From Anthoceros angustus (Eukaryota; Plantae; Anthocerotophyta), in assembly GCA_010909165.1 (NCBI GenBank), contig VJWM01000025.1:2914001-2978000 (forward strand): a DNA stretch of 64,000 bases. Reading direction: 5' to 3'. How positions within the stretch are numbered: position 1 is the first letter of the stretch; every line of letters begins with the position of its first letter. Both the position numbers and the translations under genes were made by a program. Under the pieces are notes generated by a model. The model was given only the letters and a program-made list of their open reading frames with translations, was not told the DNA's origin and searched no databases. Shown one piece after another: positions 50,177 to 59,753 of the stretch.

Positions 50177-50856
50177 GAGGATTTAGGACGCATCAAACGC
50201 CTGTCACTAGGCTGTTGCTGCTGTCTCATTTTGTTGAAGGTGTGGGAGCCGACGGGGTCAGTGCCGCCACTGAAGATCGAAGTCCCCTAGTTAATCCCTT
50301 CTGCAGGCTAGCTGAGTTCCAGTATGCCTATCCTGGTATTTTTCCAGGATATCTTTCTTAATTCCTCTTTTTAGGATTAATCTGATTTTTTGTTCTAAAG
50401 AAAAAACGCCACTCACTGTGGTGTGGGGGAAAAGAAAAGGCTAGGTGGCTCGAGGACTCTACGTGTTGTAAGGATCTTGTGGAGCCCTCACAGCTCAAAC
50501 AAATCGCATTGTGAAGCTTTGCTGGCGGTTTCAACACAACTTTTTTTTGCACCCTTTTCCCTCGCAGGACAAAGTTTGCTAACAGCTTGGAGTTTAGCGG
50601 GTCCAACAATGAGCGATAAAACAGAGCTTTGAGTCCCGAAAGAGGACGAGGACAAGATCGTCGTCGAACACGAAGACGCAAAGCAGACGCATGGACGTTT
50701 GCTGCCGCGTTGTGCCAGGCCAGCACGCTCTGGCAGCACAGTCCATTTGTTGCGGATGAGAAATTCTCGTCCTTGTATGGAAGTGTGAATTGTGAGACTG
50801 AGCTTTGGAAATCATCAGAACCTCTTGTGGCGTCCCAGGCCTGCCCTGCCGGGAGT

Positions 50857-53098
50857 ATGCAGCTCGGCATGGCGCACGCAGCTAGCGCTGCATCAGCCCG
50901 GACGCTAGCAGAAGGGCCGGCGCTGGTGCACAACTCCAGCTACCCCGCCATTCCCGTCCTCCACATGACCACGGCGGCGTGGGCAGGCGTCGGGCTCATT
51001 CTCTCCTTCTCGATTGTTGTGGCCGTGGCCGGGGCCATCAAGCTAGCATTCGCCTTGCGGAGCCTGGCCAATGAGAGGAAAGCCAAGGAGGAGGGGGATG
51101 CATCCCTGAAGCAAAAGGTAGGGCGGATCCGAGGATTCGAGTCTCCGGCCGGCGCGGTGATCCGGGCCGCGCCTCCTCCCCGCGAGGGAGTGGCTACGGT
51201 GGAGAAGGCGGCGCCAGAGCGGACGCCATGGAGCTTCGGAGCGCGGGACATGGTGGCCGAGAATCGGTACAGCGCGGTGTACCGCGTGGTGATGCCGCTC
51301 ACGGGGCAGGCGGTGGCCGTGAAGCGGGTGAGCCGAGGCCTGTGCCAGCGAGCTCGGAAGGACGCCGGCCGGGTGCTGCGGGAGGCCGGCGTGGCGCACC
51401 CTAACGTGATGTGGCCGACGGGGTTTGTGCTGGACAAGGGCCGCAGCCTGCTGTTGCTCTACCCGGAGGAGCATATCGGGAACGGGAGCTTGCGGGATCT
51501 GCTGCGGCAAGGCTGCCGGTGCGGGGAACCGGGGCCTGGAGGTGGCGGATGTGGTGAGAGGAAGACGCACGGTACGGGTGGAGATGTGGATGGGAGTTTG
51601 TGGAGGAAGGGAGTTGGCAATGGTAAGTTGGATGCAGCGCTCCCGCCTTTGCCGCTGCCTGCTGAGAGGAGGTTCAATTTTTCCAAGTTGCATTGCGAGC
51701 CGGGACTGCCGGCTTTGGATGATCTGGTGAAGGTGGACATTTCGAGGGAAAGGTATGTTCGCGGCGGTGCTGCTGCCGGTGCAGGCTGGGACGTGGAGTC
51801 TGTGGCGTCTGACATGTCGGAGCTTAGCCTGTATCCGCAGTCCACCAGCTATGCTAGCTCGGCGATGTTTTCATGCCAGGATTGGAGCGAATCTGCGGCA
51901 GGGAGCACGGCCGTGAGAGACGCCAGGGAGTACTTGAAGCGCATGGCGGAGACGTTTCGTGCGAAGGAGGGGAAATACTACGAGTCTGAGACGGAAGGGA
52001 GCATCATCTCGTTCCGTGTTGGATCCAAGTTCACCGCCAATTCCACAGAGTCTACACAGTCGTGGCGTGATGCACAATCTGAGGTTGAGTCAGTGAGGCA
52101 CGAGCCGGATCAGATTGGTGCAGGAAGTTTCCCGCATGGTGGAAGTTCGGTGGAAACGACGAAGGTTGCCAGCAGCGGCGAGTTTTCTGCTTGGTATGGC
52201 CATTCCTCCTTCCGCCGTTCCCCGTCTAAGGATCTCCCCAAGCATGCTGCGGATCTGGATCCTTACTCTACTCCGCCGCCTGTACGTTTCGAAGGAGGGA
52301 GTCCGATCGTCATGAACTACAAGAAGGAGAAGCATGAGAGTCCCATAAAGATATCGATGAACTACAAGGAGAAGGAGCATGAGGACCACGATTTGTTGAA
52401 TTGGAGGGCCAGGTTCCAGATTGCGTTGGGGCTAGCTCGGGGGCTTGCGTTTCTGCATCACAAATGCTCGCCTCCAATCATCCACCTTGACATCTCCTCC
52501 AACATCGTGTTTGTCGACAACAACATGCAGGCCAAGTTATGCGACGCGGAACTCAGCAACCTGCTGGATCCAGCTAGCTGCAGCTTGGAAGATGGAAACG
52601 TGTTAAAGGACTGTGCCTCTGAGGGCTACGTAGCGCCAGGTACATGTACATGCAGCTCGCATCAATCATTTTGTCTCGTTAGCGTTGCTGCTGTTTCCAG
52701 ATGTATTGCGGCAAAGTTTAACAATCTGGTCCGCTGTGTGATGCGCAGAATGTGGAATCGATAAGAAGAGCGTCACTCGTAGCTGCAACGTCTACAGCTT
52801 TGGGGTTGTACTATTGGAGTTGCTTACAGGAAGGGAGGCTAGCGGCTACATCGACCAGCGCCACAAACACCTTGTGTCCTGGGTGAAGGAAAATGCAAGC
52901 TCACAGTTGCAGTACCATGATGCCATCGTTATTTTTGATGGAAGGATCACGGACGACATGGGCTGCCTTCGGCATATGCTCTCCGTTTTGCGGATTGCTA
53001 TGCAGTGCATCAGCTCTGTGTCGTGTAGGCCAGATATGCAGAAGATTGTACAGCTTTTAGAGAAATCGGACTCCAGGGGAAGATTTCGGCGCAACTGA
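50857..53098 (+). CDS. Membrane-anchored PXC3-like kinase without LRRs, with a ~290-aa insert in the kinase domain
   Basis: TM (WAGVGLILSFSIVVAVAGAIKLAFAL), VAVKR, HPNV, GNGSLRDLL, [insert], LLNWRARFQIALGLARGLAFLHH, IIHLDISSNIV, DAELSNLLDP, GYVAP|ECG...NVYSFGVVLLELLTG; start uncertain. Confidence 0.8.
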
Positions 53099-53597
53099 CT
53101 TCCTCATCCTCGCCAGAACGGCAGCCTCACCGAGGTGATCATCCTTCGGCTCCCTTTCAGTTGATCCGCGCATCACACGTCCTTTGGGAAGCCAAAAGTG
53201 GGGCAGCGAATTGTACAGTCGGCCGCCTACACCTCATCAGAGCTCCACATATCGGTATGCCAGCTGCAGACTTCTTATAAGAGAGTTTTGGAATATTCTA
53301 CGGTATCTGCAGACAGAGATACGACGGTTCTCCAGTATTAATGAAAGGCCAGCTTTTAATCGAACTGTTTATGTTTCTTAATCGCACTTCAACTGTTCCC
53401 GTCGTTTCATGTGTGCTAGGGAAATGGTGATGCTCAATACCAGCATCACTATAATGTACCGCCCTATGGTATCCTTAGGGCAGAGTTAGGGCCGGTAAGC
53501 AAATGATAAAAAAAGTGCCTGCCAGTCGGTGACCGGCAAGACTTGAACATCCTTTCCTTCAAGCTCGAAGCCAAATTTCAATAAGAAACCATGACAA

Positions 53598-55421
53598 TCA
53601 GTTTCTGTGGTGCATTCGTCCGCTTTCAGAGCCTGCAAATGGGTCGATCGTCACATTGATAACCGCAGGTTGCCTGGCGGCGAAGGACTCTTTCAGAGCT
53701 GACTCTAGCTCCTCTGGCGTTCCGGCAAGATAGCCTTTGCCTCCGAAGGCTCCCATCATGACGTCATAGCGCGCACCTGGGACAAACGATGTTGGTGCAG
53801 GGTCGTCTTTGTGGGGTCCTGAGATATCTTCTGGTCGTCTGCGGTCGCCACCGTAAACGCCACCGTTGTTGAAGACAATGACAATCACAGGCAACTTGTA
53901 GCGCACTAGAGTCTGGAGGCAGAAAACGAGGGATCAAAAATGTGAGAGATGTAGTTGCTGCTGTCTTCAGACTCACTATACTCAAATGAATGACCCGATC
54001 GATGTTTACCTCAACCTCCATCGCACTGAACCCAAAGCCAGAGTCTCCTTCGACAGCCACAACCAGGCGTCCAGGTGACACCACAGCTGCAGCAATGGCG
54101 TAACCTAAACCGACACCCATGGTTCCCCAAGTGCCGGCATCGAGCCTTGTCCGGGGCTCGTTTTGTTCGAGAACTGACCTCCCCACATCCATAGTGTTGG
54201 CCCCCTCAGAAACCAGGATCGGAGCTGGTGATCCTTCGGCCAATATGGCATCTCGGATGATCCTCATGGGAGTCAGGAAGTTGAATGGAACAACGACTTT
54301 GGCCAGTGATGCTGCCATTCTGCTCTTGTTCACCTCAGTTTTCGACCGAATCTGTTGCACCCAAGGATGTTGACTTCCCACCACGAATGGGTCATCTTTG
54401 ACAACCTTGTTCAGTTGCTGGATAACAACTCTAGCATCGCCAACTAGTCCAACAGCGGGCTTCCTCAATTTTATCTCTGCTTCATCAATGTCGACCAGGA
54501 TGAACTTGACATCCTTTGACCACTGCGGAGGTTCACCAAAATGTAGCAACCAGTTCAGACGTGCACCGACAACTAGGACCACATCACTCTGTCCTACCAC
54601 CAATGATCTGGCTGCTGCAGCAGACAGGGCATGAGAATCAGGAAGCAACCCCTTCCCCATTGGAGTAGCCAAGAAGGGAATTCCCGTGACTTCAACAAAT
54701 TGTTTGATAGGCCCCTCAGCCCTTGCCAAGGCAGCTCCTTTTCCGAACACAATCAAAGGCCTCTCTGCATTCCTTAGCAGCTCAGCTGCTTTCTCCAAGT
54801 CGGTGAATGAAACTTGCTTGGTCTCCTCTCTGGCCCATACTGGAACAAGTTTCTGAACAGAGCTTAGAAGCTTTTCTGCATCTTCCTCCGACAGCGTCTC
54901 ATGTAGCACATCCGATGGTAAATCAACGTATGTCCCACCCGGCCTGCCATCCACTGCAGCGGCCAGTGCATCAGAGACAACCTTTGGAATCTCCAATATG
55001 CTCCTTGCCTTCCCAGAGTACTTGGAAAACGGTTTCACGATTTCCACCTGGTCTAACTCCTGAAAATCCCCTTTCCCGACGTCTGCTTGTGTACTGGAAC
55101 CAGACACCAAGACCAGGGGCCAAGTATTGATGGCGGCATTACTAAGACCAGCTAAGCCATGAACACAACCTGGCCCAGAAACAGTAAGCAGAACTCCAGG
55201 CTTGCCTGTCAAGTAACCAGCCGCACCGGCAGCATAACCTGCAGACTGCTCATTGTGGAACGCTATGAAGCGAACGCCTTCCTTCACGGCACTTGATGCA
55301 AATGAGGTCACAGGAATCCCGACCACTCCAAACATATGTTCCACTCCGGCCTTTGCAAAAGCCCGGGCTGCCACAGCATTGCCATCAACTACTCTATGCT
55401 CGATCTCTGCCCCATTTTTTT
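53598..55421 (-). CDS. HACL: Oxalyl-CoA decarboxylase / 2-hydroxyacyl-CoA lyase (ThDP-dependent); apparently the 3' half of an AAE3 fusion
   Basis: VDGNAVAA...HMFGVVGIPV, FHNEQSAGYAA, RTRLDAGTWGTMGVG, ThDP motif VEGDSGFGFS...NNGG, C-terminus DPFAGSESGRMHHRN*; one intron at 54009-53913. Confidence 0.95.
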
Positions 55422-55700
55422 CTGCAACCGCTCAACACAAGAGATGACACCCCTTCAGGTAGCTGAATGTTGCAACCACACCACTTTCTACGATCCCTGC
55501 AGAATTCAGACAACTGCCAAGACAAAATACTTCCCTACATGACCCTGAAGTGTCTGGCGACATAAATGTGTCTACCACATGTGCCTACCAATGCTCCAAA
55601 AGCCCAGCCAGATACCGGGCTGCAGTGTTTATTCCAGATTGATGGCATGTTTACAATCGCTGAGGTACACCCCTAACAAAGTCTACGAAAAGCCACTCGG

Positions 55701-57563
55701 CTAACCTGTTTTTTCTTCTTTTTGAGAATCGGCAGGCTTAGGCAGGAAGTGTTCAGCAACAATGCGCCGCTGAATCTTGCCCGTTGCCGTCTTAGGAAGC
55801 TCTTCACCGAAGAACAAACGCTTGGGGATCTTAAATGGGGCAAGGTTGTTCTTCAGATAATCCAGAATATCCTTCTCAGTGGCGTTTGATCCTTTAATCA
55901 ACACCACTGCAGCATTCACCTGTTGCACAGCGTGTTGTGAGTTCAGCGGAAGCTTAAGGTGACTGCAAGCCCCAGAGCTAAAAAGTTATGAGCAATCCTT
56001 AAGATGGTAAGAAGCTGTACCTCTTCACCATACTTTTCATCTGGAGCAGCAAAAGTCACCGCCTCTGAAATTTCTGGATGCCTCAGCAGCACATCATCAA
56101 TCTCGAGAGGGGATATCTTCTCGCCTGCACAAATATCATGGCAGCTGTGAGTTGTGTTCAATAACAACTGTACCACCACAACCCAAAAGATCTGGTAACA
56201 CTAGCTTACCACCGCGGTTGATGAGCTCTTTAATACGGCCAGTCAAGGTGAGGTAGCCGTCCTTGTCCAGAAACCCACGATCACCAGTATGAAACCAGCC
56301 AAACTTGAACGCAGACTTGTTGGCTTCCGGATTGTTCTTATACCCTTTTGTCACATTTGCACCCCGAATGCAGACCTCACCCTGCTCTTCGGGCTTCAGA
56401 ACGTTCCCCTCATCATCCAGAATGGCGAGTTCAACACCTGTTGCCTTGCCAACCGTCCCCGCCTTGTGCGGTCCATGTGCCGGCAGTGGATTGGCAGTCA
56501 TCTGATGACTGGCTTCTGTCATAGCATAAGCTTCAAGCACCGGAGCCTGGAAGGCTCCCTCCAGCTTCTCCAGCACCGCCGGTGCAAGACTGGAGCTGCA
56601 GCTTCGGATGAACCTAAGCTTGGGATACTCCTCCAGCGGTTTGCTCCTATGCAACGAGAGCAGTATCTGATGGATGGTGGGAACCGCAGTGTACCAAGTA
56701 GCATGGTAACCCTTTACGTCAGCCCAGAAGGTGGACGCCGAAAACCGACCAGCCGCTGGCAGGATTGCAGCCCCCCCGGCTGCCAGAGTTGAGAGCAATG
56801 CCGCCATCAGCCCGTGCACATGAAACAGAGGCATGACGATCAGAGTCCGGTCAGACTCCGATAGCTCATACGCTGCCTTGATGTTCAGCAATGACGTGGC
56901 CAAATTCTTCTGCGTCAGAGGAACCCCCTTGGGCCTGCTCGTGGTCCCTGAAGTATGGAGAAACAGCGCACCATCCTCCTCCTCAGGCTCCGGCCCTGCC
57001 AGACCTTCACCCTCGGCTCCCACCTCCAACCTTGCCCGGGGCGTGAGGACCACATCCCCGCTCCCACTCTCAGCCTTCTCCCAGTGCACCCCGGCCACCG
57101 GCAAGCCGAGTCTCGCAGCCGCAGCCTCTGCAGGTGCGTTCCCCTCCTTCGCAGGGACCAGCAGCAGCGACGACTCCGCATCCTCCAGATAGAACACGAA
57201 TTCATCCTCCGTGTAGGCAGAATTCAGAGGAGCTGCGATGGCACGCACCCGGATGGTTGCCAAAAACACAACCACGAACTGCCCACAAAGCACAAATCCG
57301 TCATCAGGCTTGGATTAAACCAATTATCCCACACTGGAGAAAGTCTGCGAGCAACCCACCTCGAGGGAGTTGGGGAAGGCAAGCGACACCAAAGCTCCAG
57401 GCTTGACACCGGCGCGCCTCAGCTGCGCCGCCGCCTTGCTGACCGCGGCACCCAATTCGGCGTGCGAGAGCTGGGGGCCTCCAGACGCTATCAGAGCCGC
57501 ATTGCCTCCGTGCTCTGCAGCGGCCTTCTCCAGCAGGGCAGTCACTGTGACAGCTGGTGCCAT
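55701..57563 (-). CDS. AAE3: Oxalate-CoA ligase (AAE3/PCS60 family acyl-activating enzyme)
   Basis: AAPLNSAYTEDEFVFYLED, LFLHTSGTTSRPKGVPLTQ, VMPLFHVHGL, TWYTAVPTIHQILL, RFIRSCSSSLAP, YAMTEASHQM, WFHTGDRG, RIKELINRGG|EKISPLE, LPKTATGKIQRRIVAEHF; ATG at 57563. Confidence 0.95.
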
Positions 57564-58148
57564 TGCGGAAGCGTCCAAGCTCTGTAGACGAAAAGGCCAA
57601 CAAGTAAGCTATATCAACCGCTTGAGAGACTTTGGAGCCTTCCTGGATTGCTTCCGTAAGGCGAGCATCCAGTGCACCTGGCCTAGCCGCCTGTGCATGG
57701 AGGATAGCAATATTCTGGAAAGCACACGTCATAATACCACTTCCTTCGCTGGTCCAACGAGGAAATTGCAACTCACGCTCCAGGAACAGATTGCGGAAAT
57801 TTCATGTCATTCCCCAGGAACAGCTTGCCACGACGATAGGTACCCAAATCCTGGCACAACCTATCGGGTAACATACAGGATCGATAGTACAAGCAATTAC
57901 GGGAAAACCTAGCAAACAAATCGCTTCTGTTGTATTAAGGTAAGGACCTCGAAGGCACCTCAGAAAAATGCACACCGCCAGGCACGACGCCACAACAAGA
58001 GCTAGTATGCATGAGTCAGGCTGAAAATTTTCTCGGCAGCACCTTAATGGAGTGGAAAATCTCGGTTTCCATGTACTGGAGCTGGTCCAAGGACGACGCT
58101 TTGAGTCCAGGGAGGCTTTGGAATCACAAAAGCGAGGGGTTTCAAGGA

Positions 58149-58805
58149 TTAGAACCGGAGCTTAGAAAAAAACCACCGATTCTTGCCGGTCTTGAATCTC
58201 TCCTCTAGTAGAGCCTTCGCCTCCTGCAAAGGAGGGGACTTGGTAAGAAAAGTAAAGCACAAAAAACTGGTGCAGGACTGGATGTCTTGGGTGGTGTATA
58301 CCTTGCGAGCCTCGACTCGCTTCGCCTTGGATTCCAGTTTCTCCGGCACCACCACGGCCTTCAGGTCGACATCGAGAGTATACCTGTGCATGCGTGGCAC
58401 AGACAGGTCGGATCGTCATGCCACACCTTCAGCGGAGAGAAAAACCTAACGAAAGGGAATTGCATCGCACCTTGTCGGCATGAGGTGGTTGTAGTTGACA
58501 AGCTTGATGAAGGATTTCAGTCTGGAGCGTTTGGCTATCTTCTTGGCCGACGCCTTCTTAATCACCTGCCATGCGAGTGAAGTTCGCGAGCTCAGGCCAG
58601 CTGGCCAGGTGACCGGGAAGGAATGCAGCAGCAGGACCATAAGCCTCACCTTTCTAGGGTACTTGGCGATGCCAACCACCAGGGCATGCCCATACCTACG
58701 TTGCTGCGTTCCTTCATCGAAGTTTTTCACGATCACAGCCTTCCGGCCTGCATACCTCCCTTGCAGCAGCACCACCACCTTGTTCGGCTTCAGAAACTTC
58801 ACCAT
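58149..58805 (-). CDS. RPL27: 60S ribosomal protein L27 (eL27)
   Basis: [32 protein letters not shown]...YPRK / VIKK...[13 protein letters not shown] / RYTLDVDLK / [24 protein letters not shown]; four exons. Confidence 0.96.
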
Positions 58806-59753
58806 TGTGGCAAGCTGCAGAGATTCAAAGCATTTAGAGAAGGCTACTATCTGCCACCAACTGAAACACACAATCCCCTTAGGTGCAGTTCACCACACCA
58901 GTCTCTAGACGCCGCCCCCAACGGAACGGGTTCACCGGACAGTCACAACCGCCTTCACAACGCTAACGACAGCACGCCTCCCGCCCCACATCGAGGGCAA
59001 GCTTCTCACTTACGAACCCTTGCAATATCGGCCTTCTGTTTGGACACCATCTTGTCGAATAATTATTTTAAAACAAATAATTTTCTCAAGATTTAATAAT
59101 TTTTAATCATGAAAATATGCCCGACGGTAATTAGACGTGGGTCCATTGAAACTCCACGGTCAATCAGCCTTGAGTCGGATCACGGCATAGATGGGTACTA
59201 TCCATCCCTATTGTAAAAAGCCCTAATGTTGTAAAAAGCCCTATATCGCCTATTGTAAAACTCTACGGGGGCAACTTTGAATTCAAATCCTTGATCAAGT
59301 TCACAATAAACAAGGCCCAACGGTATTGCATGAACTACAAGGTTCTGTTAGGCAGACCTTGGTTGTATTGATCGAGTGTGTTTTTTATTTTGGTCGCAGC
59401 GGTCTTACGTTTAAGTCTCGTAAGGTAGGTCCTGCGGAGACCTCTTTTGTGTCCTAGAGCAAGGCTCCCTATGAGGGTGAGACTAAACCCCTTTCTGATG
59501 GCTATACCTCAAGAGCCACACATGTTAGCTCATCTGGTGGTAGCGATAGGGCCCACCGTGGACCATTTGTTGAACTTATGGAAATAAAGGTTGATTTGGA
59601 GTACTCTTGTTTTCAAGTAGAAGCTGAGGCGGAGGACTCCGAGGATGTGGCTTATAGAAGAGGAGTAGCCTTCTGGAAAGGTAAAGCCTATGATAGAGAG
59701 CTCCACTGGAATACCTGTCATGTCAGTAACCTGAAAAACAAATACATCTAATA

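What the first reader, a model, noticed from the sequence alone, without database searches (positions are those of the whole stretch)
53598..57563. Predicted single-chain oxalate-CoA ligase / oxalyl-CoA decarboxylase fusion (AAE3-OXC)
Established: plants degrade oxalate via AAE3 (oxalate to oxalyl-CoA), then oxalyl-CoA decarboxylase (to formyl-CoA + CO2); in Arabidopsis these are separate unlinked genes. Seen: the two are head-to-tail in pathway order. The AAE3 stop lies inside a donor site (ACA G|GTTAG, intron start 55705). An acceptor (ttgcag|, 55422) precedes the decarboxylase frame, which has a TGA just upstream and no in-frame ATG; the ATG at 55416 is out of frame and stops after 8 codons. 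Removing the 284-nt phase-1 intron gives ...HFLPKPADSQKEEKT-E-KNGAEIEHRVVDGNAVAA..., exactly in frame. Inference: a ~1,100-aa bifunctional enzyme channelling reactive oxalyl-CoA, with intron retention able to yield stand-alone AAE3 as a splice switch. The alternative is that G4 after ATG 55416 is really G5, giving a separate gene (MGAEIEHR...); even then this would be a two-gene pathway cluster.
Basis: partly seen in the sequence, partly recalled or inferred. Interest (0 to 1): 0.9.

Follow-up and report, generated by a model that had tools for sequence, protein, structure and literature searches.

The report
Ancestral oxalate ligase–decarboxylase fusion gene
This plant gene joins the two enzymes of the CoA-dependent oxalate breakdown pathway into one 1,105-residue protein by splicing; the join is real and expressed, but it is the old, widespread state in algae and bryophytes, not a new invention.

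Summary
On the minus strand, an oxalate-CoA ligase (AAE3-type) and an oxalyl-CoA decarboxylase (OXC) are joined by a 284-nt GT..AG phase-1 intron (55705-55422). This gives one 3,318-nt ORF of 1,105 aa. RNA contigs from three related organisms carry exactly this joint at 72-80% of the local depth. The unspliced form makes up the rest, and no other intron of the gene shows an unspliced form. No run shows a fifth G, so the "separate gene" alternative fails.

The fusion is not novel. The product aligns end to end (75-76% identity) with annotated ~1,100-aa proteins of Sphagnum, Marchantia and Calypogeia. The same architecture occurs in streptophyte algae, chlorophytes, Galdieria and alveolates. Trees of both halves make the fused state ancestral and the split state of vascular plants derived.

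One feature may be new. All five bryophyte-grade genomes examined have the same linker donor, CAG|GTTAG, so retaining the intron ends the ligase after one Gly. None of 17 other donors in these genes has T at +3. This supports a ligase-only isoform but does not prove one. The searched papers do not mention the natural fusion.

The parts
57564..57634 (-). 5' untranslated region (minimum extent)
   Evidence: The RNA contig of run X1 starts at 57634 and is identical to the window (record 4).
57360..57563 (-). Exon 1, from ATG 57563; ligase N-terminus (204 nt)
   Evidence: Joint 57278/57360 in three RNA runs; spliced CDS.
56210..57278 (-). Exon 2, AMP-binding core of the oxalate-CoA ligase half
   Evidence: Pfam PF00501, E = 4e-64. 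Best solved match is Arabidopsis oxalate-CoA ligase 5IE0, E = 3e-147. Motifs A3, A5, A7 and A8 present.
56021..56124 (-). Exon 3 (104 nt)
   Evidence: Joints 56123/56209 and 55917/56019 (with cut ambiguity +1 and +2) in three RNA runs. Same 104-nt exon in Marchantia, Calypogeia and Sphagnum.
55706..55919 (-). Exon 4, AMP-binding_C with the A10 lysine motif and the start of the linker; ends in phase 1
   Evidence: Pfam PF13193; PKTATGKI at aa 501; RNA joint.
55422..55705 (-). Linker intron, 284 nt, GT..AG, phase 1; spliced in 72-80% of transcripts and retained in the rest
   Evidence: RNA joint 55421/55706 in X1, X5 and X16, plus an unspliced unitig 55395-55735. All sampled words of the intron are present in RNA run X1. 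Homologous phase-1 linker introns in Marchantia, Calypogeia, Sphagnum, L006, Closterium and Coccomyxa.
55701..55703 (-). TAG that ends the ligase ORF when the intron is retained (donor CAG|GTTAG)
   Evidence: The same donor and Gly-TAG are present in five genomes.
55628..55633 (-). AATAAA hexamer inside the linker intron; possible poly(A) signal for a ligase-only mRNA (inferred only)
   Evidence: Sequence. The relative L006 has GGAATAAA about 100 nt into its linker intron.
55413..55415 (-). Out-of-frame ATG in exon 5; not a start codon for the decarboxylase
   Evidence: Stops after 8 codons. No indel in any run. Reads AAG in relative L006.
54010..55421 (-). Exon 5, decarboxylase half: TPP_enzyme_N, TPP_enzyme_M and the start of TPP_enzyme_C
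   Evidence: Pfam. NCBIfam oxalyl-CoA decarboxylase NF006721, 502 bits for this partial piece. Solved OXC/HACL structures, E = 1e-129 to 4e-112.
53598..53912 (-). Exon 6, end of TPP_enzyme_C, with stop TGA at 53600-53598
   Evidence: Joint 53912/54010 in three RNA runs; Pfam. The GDSGFGFS...NN ThDP motif spans exons 5 and 6.
53504..53597 (-). 3' untranslated region (minimum extent)
   Evidence: The RNA contig of X1 ends at 53504 (record 1).

Best explanation
This is one gene on the minus strand with six exons. Its main mRNA encodes a 1,105-aa bifunctional enzyme. The N-terminal half is an AAE3-type oxalate-CoA ligase. After a linker of about 30 residues comes a ThDP-dependent oxalyl-CoA decarboxylase.

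Shown:
- The linker is interrupted by a 284-nt phase-1 intron. Removing it joins the two halves in frame.
- This spliced form is the majority transcript in three related organisms.
- The gene is the ortholog of fused genes already annotated in other bryophytes and many algae. The fused state is ancestral, and vascular plants carry the split state.
- The decarboxylase half has no usable start codon of its own in this genome.
- About a quarter of transcripts keep only this intron. In these the ligase ORF ends after one extra Gly at a TAG that is part of the donor (GTTAG).
- This donor is identical in five bryophyte-grade genomes.

Inferred:
- The decarboxylase half is made only as part of the fusion.
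- The retained (or intron-polyadenylated) form supplies free ligase.
- The fused protein passes oxalyl-CoA directly from the ligase to the decarboxylase, yielding formyl-CoA and CO2.
For: Sequence and reading frame:
- One 3,318-nt ORF after splicing.

Domains and catalytic residues:
- Pfam AMP-binding, AMP-binding_C and TPP_N/M/C.
- Catalytic motifs of both halves intact.
- Closest solved and curated families are oxalate-CoA ligase and oxalyl-CoA decarboxylase.

Transcripts:
- The joint 55421/55706 has depth 68.5, 141.3 and 80.4 in X1, X5 and X16. The unspliced unitig has depth 27.2, 35.8 and 22.3.
- In X1 the two sum to 95.7, against flanking exon depths of 94.2 and 93.1.
- The four other introns are spliced, and no unspliced contig of them was laid in any of the three runs.
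- A relative's DNA contig (X18) is collinear, with indels only in non-coding parts.

Orthologs:
- End-to-end alignment at 75-76% identity to annotated fusions of Calypogeia, Marchantia paleacea and Sphagnum fallax.
- A Sphagnum run contig carries the whole 1,102-aa ORF uninterrupted (L003).
- Same exon layout and same phase-1 linker intron in those genomes.
- Donor CAG|GTTAG in 5 of 5 genomes, while 0 of 17 other donors have T at +3.
- The Sphagnum jensenii ligase model ends ...STSG, exactly at that stop.

Distribution and direction:
- The fused architecture occurs in streptophyte algae, chlorophytes, Galdieria and alveolates.
- Both halves give trees with the stand-alone vascular-plant forms nested inside fused lineages.
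Against: - The transcript evidence is from assembled contigs (Logan unitigs), not reads. Depths are mean k-mer depths and are noisy for a 57-nt junction unitig. In X16 the two forms sum to only about half of the exon depth.
- Contigs carry no strand, end or full-length information. A ligase mRNA ending inside the intron plus a transcript starting inside it cannot be told apart from true retention.
- A retained-intron mRNA would have a long 3' part with a downstream exon junction. It could be a target of nonsense-mediated decay and not a productive message.
- No protein-level evidence exists for either product.
- No enzyme assay exists for any fused form.
- Only one sizeable RNA run of the window's own organism was available.
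Confidence: 0.85

Rival explanations
1. Two separate genes, with an assembly error. The run of four G after ATG 55415 is really five, which would give the decarboxylase its own start (MGAEIEHR...). On this reading the splice is incidental.
For: An ATG lies 7 nt into exon 5, and one extra G would put it in frame.
Against: - RNA contigs of X1 cover 55395-55424 and 54603-55424 with no differences.
- No indel at 55410-55413 in any of four runs, including a 16-kb DNA contig of a relative.
- In relative L006 the ATG reads AAG, while the fused frame stays open.
- Other bryophyte orthologs have no Met at that place.
- The joint is the majority form in RNA.
Confidence: 0.02
2. A conjoined gene pair. 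The functional products are two separate proteins from independent transcripts, and the spliced chimera is a by-product of read-through transcription.
For: - A stop sits at the donor.
- Marchantia and Sphagnum have an in-frame ATG 7 nt before the acceptor.
- Some Sphagnum annotations model the two halves separately (P0389, P0268).
- An AATAAA lies inside the intron.
Against: - In this genome there is no in-frame ATG between a TGA in the intron and Met 55335, which lies inside the conserved TPP-binding core.
- The joint is 72-80% of the local depth.
- The fused frame is preserved from Galdieria to bryophytes, including genes with no linker intron at all.
- Both halves co-evolve along the organismal tree.
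Confidence: 0.05
3. The gene makes only the fusion protein. The unspliced fraction is slow or inefficient removal of a weak-donor intron and has no product of its own. The GTTAG donor is conserved for splicing reasons or by inheritance, not for its stop codon.
For: - GTTAG is a sub-optimal donor, and sub-optimal donors give retention.
- The retained form would be a predicted target of nonsense-mediated decay.
- The five genomes are not independent samples.
- Contig data cannot show cytoplasmic or translated RNA.
Against: - Retention is specific to this one intron in three organisms.
- Positions +3 to +5 of the donor are identical in five genomes, while every other donor of the gene has drifted.
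- Read-through stops at once (Gly-TAG) in all five, against 3 and 9 codons in Closterium and Coccomyxa.
Confidence: 0.4

Closest known systems
Annotated fused proteins of other bryophytes: Sphagnum fallax BDL97_09G066300 (1,102 aa), Marchantia paleacea Mapa_006291 (1,101 aa) and the Calypogeia fissa unnamed product (1,105 aa)
   Same: - Same five Pfam domains in the same order.
- 75-76% identity end to end.
- Same exon layout.
- Same phase-1 linker intron with donor CAG|GTTAG.
   Different: - Marchantia and Sphagnum have an in-frame ATG 7 nt before the linker acceptor. The window has GTT there and a TGA just upstream.
- All three are named only 'hypothetical' or 'unnamed' in their records.
Fused proteins of algae and alveolates: Chlorokybus, Spirogloea, Mesotaenium, Closterium, Coccomyxa, Chlorella, Chloropicon, Galdieria and Chromera, mostly named '2-hydroxyacyl-CoA lyase'
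   Same: Same domain order and similar length, about 1,100-1,250 aa, at 48-66% identity over the whole length. Closterium and Coccomyxa also have a phase-1 intron in the linker.
   Different: - No stop directly in the donor: read-through runs 3 codons in Closterium and 9 in Coccomyxa, and Galdieria has no linker intron.
- Several chlorophyte and alveolate forms end in peroxisomal-type tripeptides (SKL, SKV, SKM, ANL). The streptophyte forms end in HRN or HKN.
Arabidopsis AAE3 (oxalate-CoA ligase, PDB 5IE0) and AtOXC (PMC8004701), encoded by two separate genes
   Same: - Same two enzyme families and the same pathway order.
- The ligase exon matches 5IE0 at E = 3e-147.
- The decarboxylase half is about 70% identical to seed-plant OXC.
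- The C-terminus ...SESGRM.H[RK]N is shared.
   Different: They are separate polypeptides from separate genes. In the trees the seed-plant forms sit inside the fused lineages, so they are the derived, split state.
Bacterial oxalyl-CoA decarboxylase (Oxalobacter formigenes 2C31, E. coli 2Q27) and the OXC/HACL superfamily (8VZ* structures)
   Same: ThDP fold, catalytic Glu and GDS...NN motif. E = 1e-129 to 4e-112. The best NCBIfam model is oxalyl-CoA decarboxylase NF006721.
   Different: - The bacterial enzymes are stand-alone. In my recollection of the literature they work with formyl-CoA transferase, not with a ligase.
- Sequence alone cannot settle OXC against 2-hydroxyacyl-CoA lyase activity.

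Membership tests
AAE3-type oxalate-CoA ligase (ANL adenylate-forming superfamily) | AMP-binding and AMP-binding_C domains | tested here: met
   PF00501, E = 4e-64; PF13193, E = 1e-8.
AAE3-type oxalate-CoA ligase (ANL adenylate-forming superfamily) | Core motifs A3 (P-loop), A5, A7, A8 and the A10 catalytic lysine | tested here: met
   TSGTTSRPK at 177, YAMTE at 319, GWFHTGD at 395, GRIKELINRGG at 415, PKTATGKI at 501.
AAE3-type oxalate-CoA ligase (ANL adenylate-forming superfamily) | Closest characterised relatives are oxalate-CoA ligases and not other acyl-CoA ligases | tested here: met
   All four PDB matches at E <= 1e-40 are oxalate-CoA ligases (5IE0, 6QJZ, 8AFF, 8ATD). The ligase half clusters with land-plant oxalate-CoA ligases in the tree.
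AAE3-type oxalate-CoA ligase (ANL adenylate-forming superfamily) | Oxalate as the preferred substrate | not testable with these tools
   Needs an enzyme assay.
Oxalyl-CoA decarboxylase (ThDP-dependent OXC/HACL family) | TPP_enzyme_N, TPP_enzyme_M and TPP_enzyme_C domains in order | tested here: met
   PF02776, PF00205 and PF02775 across exons 5 and 6.
Oxalyl-CoA decarboxylase (ThDP-dependent OXC/HACL family) | Catalytic Glu of the N domain and the GD(S/G)...NN ThDP-Mg motif | tested here: met
   HNEQ at 586; GDSGFGFS...NN at 989.
Oxalyl-CoA decarboxylase (ThDP-dependent OXC/HACL family) | Score above the curated cut-off of the NCBIfam equivalog NF006721 | tested here: inconclusive
   Exon 5 alone (470 of 574 residues) scores 502 bits against a cut-off of 557. 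The complete C-terminal half of the Calypogeia ortholog scores 638 bits. The window's spliced half could not be submitted by reference.
Oxalyl-CoA decarboxylase (ThDP-dependent OXC/HACL family) | Decarboxylation of oxalyl-CoA, as opposed to 2-hydroxyacyl-CoA lyase activity | not testable with these tools
   The fusion to an oxalate ligase argues for oxalyl-CoA by association only.
Fused ligase-decarboxylase architecture of algae and bryophytes | One continuous reading frame across both halves in mature mRNA | tested here: met
   Spliced CDS of 3,318 nt with one stop. RNA joint in three organisms.
Fused ligase-decarboxylase architecture of algae and bryophytes | Collinear full-length similarity to annotated fusions | tested here: met
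   Residues 1-1105 align to residues 1-1105 of Calypogeia, 1-1101 of Marchantia and 3-1102 of Sphagnum.
Fused ligase-decarboxylase architecture of algae and bryophytes | Shared phase-1 intron in the linker | tested here: met
Conjoined (read-through) pair of independent genes | The downstream gene has its own start codon | tested here: not met
   No in-frame ATG between the TGA in the intron and Met 55335, which lies inside the TPP core.
Conjoined (read-through) pair of independent genes | Independent promoter and poly(A) site between the two halves | not testable with these tools
   Contigs carry no ends. An AATAAA at 55633-55628 is only a motif.

The most novel reading that the evidence does not exclude
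The bryophyte linker intron is a conserved isoform switch and a living intermediate of gene fission.

- The ligase stop codon is built into the donor (CAG|GTTAG) in all five genomes examined.
- In Marchantia and Sphagnum a start codon sits 7 nt before the acceptor.
- One locus could therefore give the fused enzyme, a free ligase and, in some lineages, a free decarboxylase.
- Vascular plants and some mosses later fixed the split.

If so, this would show how an ancient bifunctional enzyme was taken apart through alternative splicing.
Probability: 0.4. Interest if true: 0.6.

Novelty: new member of a known kind. Interest (0 to 1): 0.42.

Why it matters
- **Pathway link.** AAE3 and OXC were connected experimentally in seed plants only in the last fifteen years or so. 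A conserved natural fusion of the two, from red and green algae to bryophytes, is independent "Rosetta stone" support that they work together. It also argues that the many database entries named "2-hydroxyacyl-CoA lyase" are oxalate-pathway enzymes.
- **Direction of evolution.** The textbook Arabidopsis arrangement of two unlinked genes is the derived state.
- **Annotation.** The stop in the donor and, in some lineages, the ATG at the acceptor make gene finders split this gene. That appears to have happened in the Sphagnum jensenii and S. balticum models and in Klebsormidium.
- **Possible regulation.** The conserved stop-in-donor intron offers a simple, testable case of isoform control of a bifunctional enzyme. 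It may also show a route to gene fission.

Tried and rejected
- **Bacterial-type promoter/terminator scan and composition profile of the linker.** Not informative for a eukaryotic gene.
- **Literature searches.** Five full-text searches and two in-paper searches found no paper describing the natural fusion. "Fusion" in the hits means GFP or tag fusions. The OXC conservation paper (PMC9090294) lists Physcomitrium and Chlamydomonas OXC without comment. Absence from this library does not prove that nothing has been published.
- **Own-genome annotation.** Homology searches with the window's exons gave best hits of only 81-85% identity. I could not see how the window's own genome or its close relatives are annotated.
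- **Closterium NIES-68 protein P0162.** Not on record for a locus; another Closterium was used instead.
- **Intron-only run search.** Found only one RNA run of the window's organism, so the retention ratio could not be replicated within that species.
- **In-frame ATG at 55563 as a start for the decarboxylase.** Rejected, because its frame is closed by the TGA before the acceptor.
- **The "M" at the start of the relative's ORF P0265.** Rejected as a start: it is a GTG chosen by a bacterial-style ORF caller.
- **Submitting the whole spliced protein.** It has no single reference, so the halves were searched apart.
Full report
**1. Observation**

Both coding regions lie on the minus strand.

- The upstream one starts at ATG 57563 and carries Pfam AMP-binding and AMP-binding_C.
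- The downstream one carries TPP_enzyme_N, TPP_enzyme_M and TPP_enzyme_C.
- The ligase frame ends ...KEEKT-G-TAG. The exon's last base is G 55706, GT follows at 55705-55704, and the TAG (55703-55701) is part of the donor GTTAG.
- The acceptor ttgcag ends at 55422.
- The 284-nt intron is phase 1. Splicing rebuilds G|AA (Glu) and continues KNGAEIEHRVVDGN... in the decarboxylase frame.
- A TGA lies three codons before the acceptor in that frame.
- The nearby ATG is at 55415-55413, not 55416. It is out of frame and stops after 8 codons.
- The six exons join into 3,318 nt and encode 1,105 aa with a single terminal stop.

**2. Transcript evidence**

Contigs of four public runs were laid on 53400-57700.

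- X1 is identical to the window. X5 and X16 are two related organisms, each with pieces 90-99% alike.
- All three are RNA-derived. Their contigs skip all five introns at GT..AG boundaries.
- X18 is a 16-kb DNA contig of one relative that runs through the locus with its introns.

The linker joint 55421/55706 and the unspliced unitig 55395-55735 compare as follows:

| Run | Joint depth | Unspliced depth | Spliced share |
|---|---|---|---|
| X1 | 68.5 | 27.2 | 72% |
| X5 | 141.3 | 35.8 | 80% |
| X16 | 80.4 | 22.3 | 78% |

- In X1 the two branches sum to 95.7, against 94.2 and 93.1 in the flanking exons. Essentially all transcripts there run through from ligase to decarboxylase.
- In X5 the sum is 177, against 130-204. 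In X16 it is 103, against 182-201, so that balance is rough.
- None of the three RNA runs has an unspliced contig for any of the other four introns. This rules out DNA contamination or general pre-mRNA as the source of the retained form.
- No run shows an indel at the G run 55410-55413. All indels in the relative's DNA contig fall in introns or untranslated regions.
- The intron-only search found all its sampled words in X1.

Limits: these are assembled unitigs with mean k-mer depths. They carry no strand, no ends and no full-length molecules.

**3. What the two halves are**

*Ligase half*
- Its best solved relatives are all oxalate-CoA ligases: Arabidopsis 5IE0 (E = 3e-147), Lathyrus 6QJZ and yeast 8AFF.
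- Motifs A3, A5, A7, A8 and the A10 lysine are present.

*Decarboxylase half*
- Its best curated family is oxalyl-CoA decarboxylase NF006721. Exon 5 alone scores 502 bits, which is below the 557 cut-off because the piece is partial. The complete half of the Calypogeia ortholog scores 638 bits.
- Solved OXC/HACL enzymes match at E = 1e-129 to 4e-112.
- The catalytic Glu (HNEQ) and the GDS...NN ThDP motif are present.

**4. The fusion is not new**

- An exhaustive profile-free search with exon 5 returned long hits. These are a 1,105-aa Chlorokybus protein, Closterium (1,615 aa), Chromera (1,233 aa) and Rhytidocystis (1,256 aa). All have the five domains in the same order.
- Searching with the Chlorokybus fusion listed dozens of ~1,100-aa proteins with the same architecture. 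They include Sphagnum fallax, Marchantia paleacea, Calypogeia fissa, Spirogloea, Mesotaenium, several Closterium, Trebouxia, Coccomyxa ("probable 2-hydroxyacyl-CoA lyase at C-terminar half"), Chlorella, Micractinium, Chlamydomonas eustigma, Chloropicon, Ostreobium, Botryococcus and two Galdieria.
- The window's product aligns end to end with the three bryophyte proteins at 74.5-76.2% identity.
- A Sphagnum run contig (L003) carries the 1,102-aa ORF uninterrupted, although the genome has six introns. It is therefore a spliced fusion mRNA.
- Lycophytes, ferns and seed plants have stand-alone-length proteins for both enzymes.
- In maximum-likelihood trees of each half, the stand-alone vascular-plant forms sit inside a grade of fused streptophyte algae and bryophytes. 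So does a clade sister to Sphagnum, probably other mosses. Fused chlorophytes and Galdieria lie outside.
- The fused state is therefore ancestral in the green lineage, and the split state arose more than once.
- I found no paper in the searchable library that mentions the natural fusion.

**5. The linker intron**

Exact spliced mapping of the annotated proteins on their genomes gave these results:

- Window, Marchantia and Calypogeia share the same six-exon layout. Sphagnum has one extra intron.
- The linker intron is phase 1 in all of them.

| Genome | Linker donor |
|---|---|
| Window | AAACAG\|GTTAGC |
| Marchantia paleacea | CTTCAG\|GTTAGC |
| Calypogeia fissa | GCTCAG\|GTTAGC |
| Sphagnum fallax | CATCAG\|GTTAGA |
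| Relative L006 (81-85% protein identity) | AAATCAG\|GTTAGC |

- In every case read-through gives Gly then TAG.
- The 17 other donors in the four annotated loci vary at +3 to +5, and none has T at +3.
- Closterium and Coccomyxa also have a phase-1 intron in the linker, but with other donors and stops after 3 and 9 codons. Galdieria has none.
- The annotated Sphagnum jensenii ligase (522 aa) ends ...STSG, which is exactly the retained-intron product.
- The Sphagnum balticum decarboxylase model starts MPEDIN..., using an ATG 7 nt before the acceptor.
- That in-frame ATG is present in Sphagnum fallax and Marchantia. It is GTG in Calypogeia, GTT in the window and ACT in L006.
- So in the window the decarboxylase has no start codon of its own. 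The next in-frame Met (55335) lies inside the conserved HMFGVVG core.
- Both the window and L006 carry AATAAA about 70-100 nt into the intron. Ligase-only mRNAs might therefore end there instead of retaining the whole intron. Contigs cannot tell these apart.

**6. Mechanism**

*Shown*
- One gene whose majority mRNA encodes the fusion.
- A minority form that keeps only the linker intron.
- A stop fixed in the donor across bryophyte-grade lineages.

*Inferred*
- The fusion converts oxalate to formyl-CoA and CO2 in two steps on one chain.
- The minority form yields a free 531-aa ligase.
- Channelling and stress regulation are both untested.

*Main open rival for the isoform part*
- Retention may be an unproductive consequence of a weak donor, with the RNA removed by nonsense-mediated decay.

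**7. Verdict**

- The core of the interpretation, a fusion by splicing with a retained form also present, is supported.
- The sequencing-error alternative is refuted.
- The gene is a further member of an already annotated but apparently undiscussed architecture.
- The conserved stop-in-donor intron is the part worth a follow-up.

Noticed in passing
P0200 and P0412 (Klebsormidium nitens, same 279,628-nt contig): The 'stand-alone' Klebsormidium decarboxylase model (618 aa) begins MPRTATGKIQRR, which is inside the ligase A10 motif. The neighbouring ligase model (511 aa) ends aberrantly just before that motif. Together they look like one fused gene split by the annotation.
   Followed up: partly
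P0151, P0389 and P0268 (Sphagnum fallax, S. jensenii, S. balticum): Three Sphagnum annotations model the same locus differently: fused (1,102 aa), ligase alone ending at the donor stop (522 aa), and decarboxylase alone starting at the ATG 7 nt before the acceptor (581 aa).
   Followed up: partly
C-termini of fused proteins: Chlorophyte and alveolate fusions end in peroxisomal-type tripeptides (SKL, SKV, SKM, ANL, SAL). Streptophyte fusions and plant OXC end in HRN or HKN, and Galdieria in SHN. This suggests a change of compartment within the family.
   Followed up: no
P0033 (855 aa): A different fusion: a PEP_mutase/isocitrate-lyase-family domain joined to an OXC-type TPP enzyme. From memory, the PEP-mutase family includes oxaloacetate hydrolases that make oxalate, so this may link oxalate production and breakdown. 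Source organism not looked up.
   Followed up: no
P0212 (920 aa): An OXC-type TPP enzyme fused to formyl-transferase domains (PF00551, PF02911) in a eukaryotic transcriptome. It may be a link to the fate of the formyl-CoA product.
   Followed up: no
P0002, P0170 and P0180 (Closterium, ~1,600 aa): These Closterium fusion models carry an insertion of about 450 residues between TPP_enzyme_M and TPP_enzyme_C that other Closterium models (1,147-1,161 aa) lack. It is probably an unspliced intron in the annotation.
   Followed up: no
window 58446-58871 (-): The ORF upstream of the fusion gene begins [26 protein letters not shown]..., which looks like ribosomal protein eL27. It appears interrupted by an intron.
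   Followed up: no
window 50629-53098 (+): Long ORFs on the opposite strand, downstream of the fusion gene, contain protein-kinase-like motifs (a receptor-like kinase, convergent with the fusion gene).
   Followed up: no
window 57572-57637: In organism B the 5' untranslated region differs from the window: 64 nt are replaced by 67 other letters in both RNA (X5) and DNA (X18) contigs.
   Followed up: no
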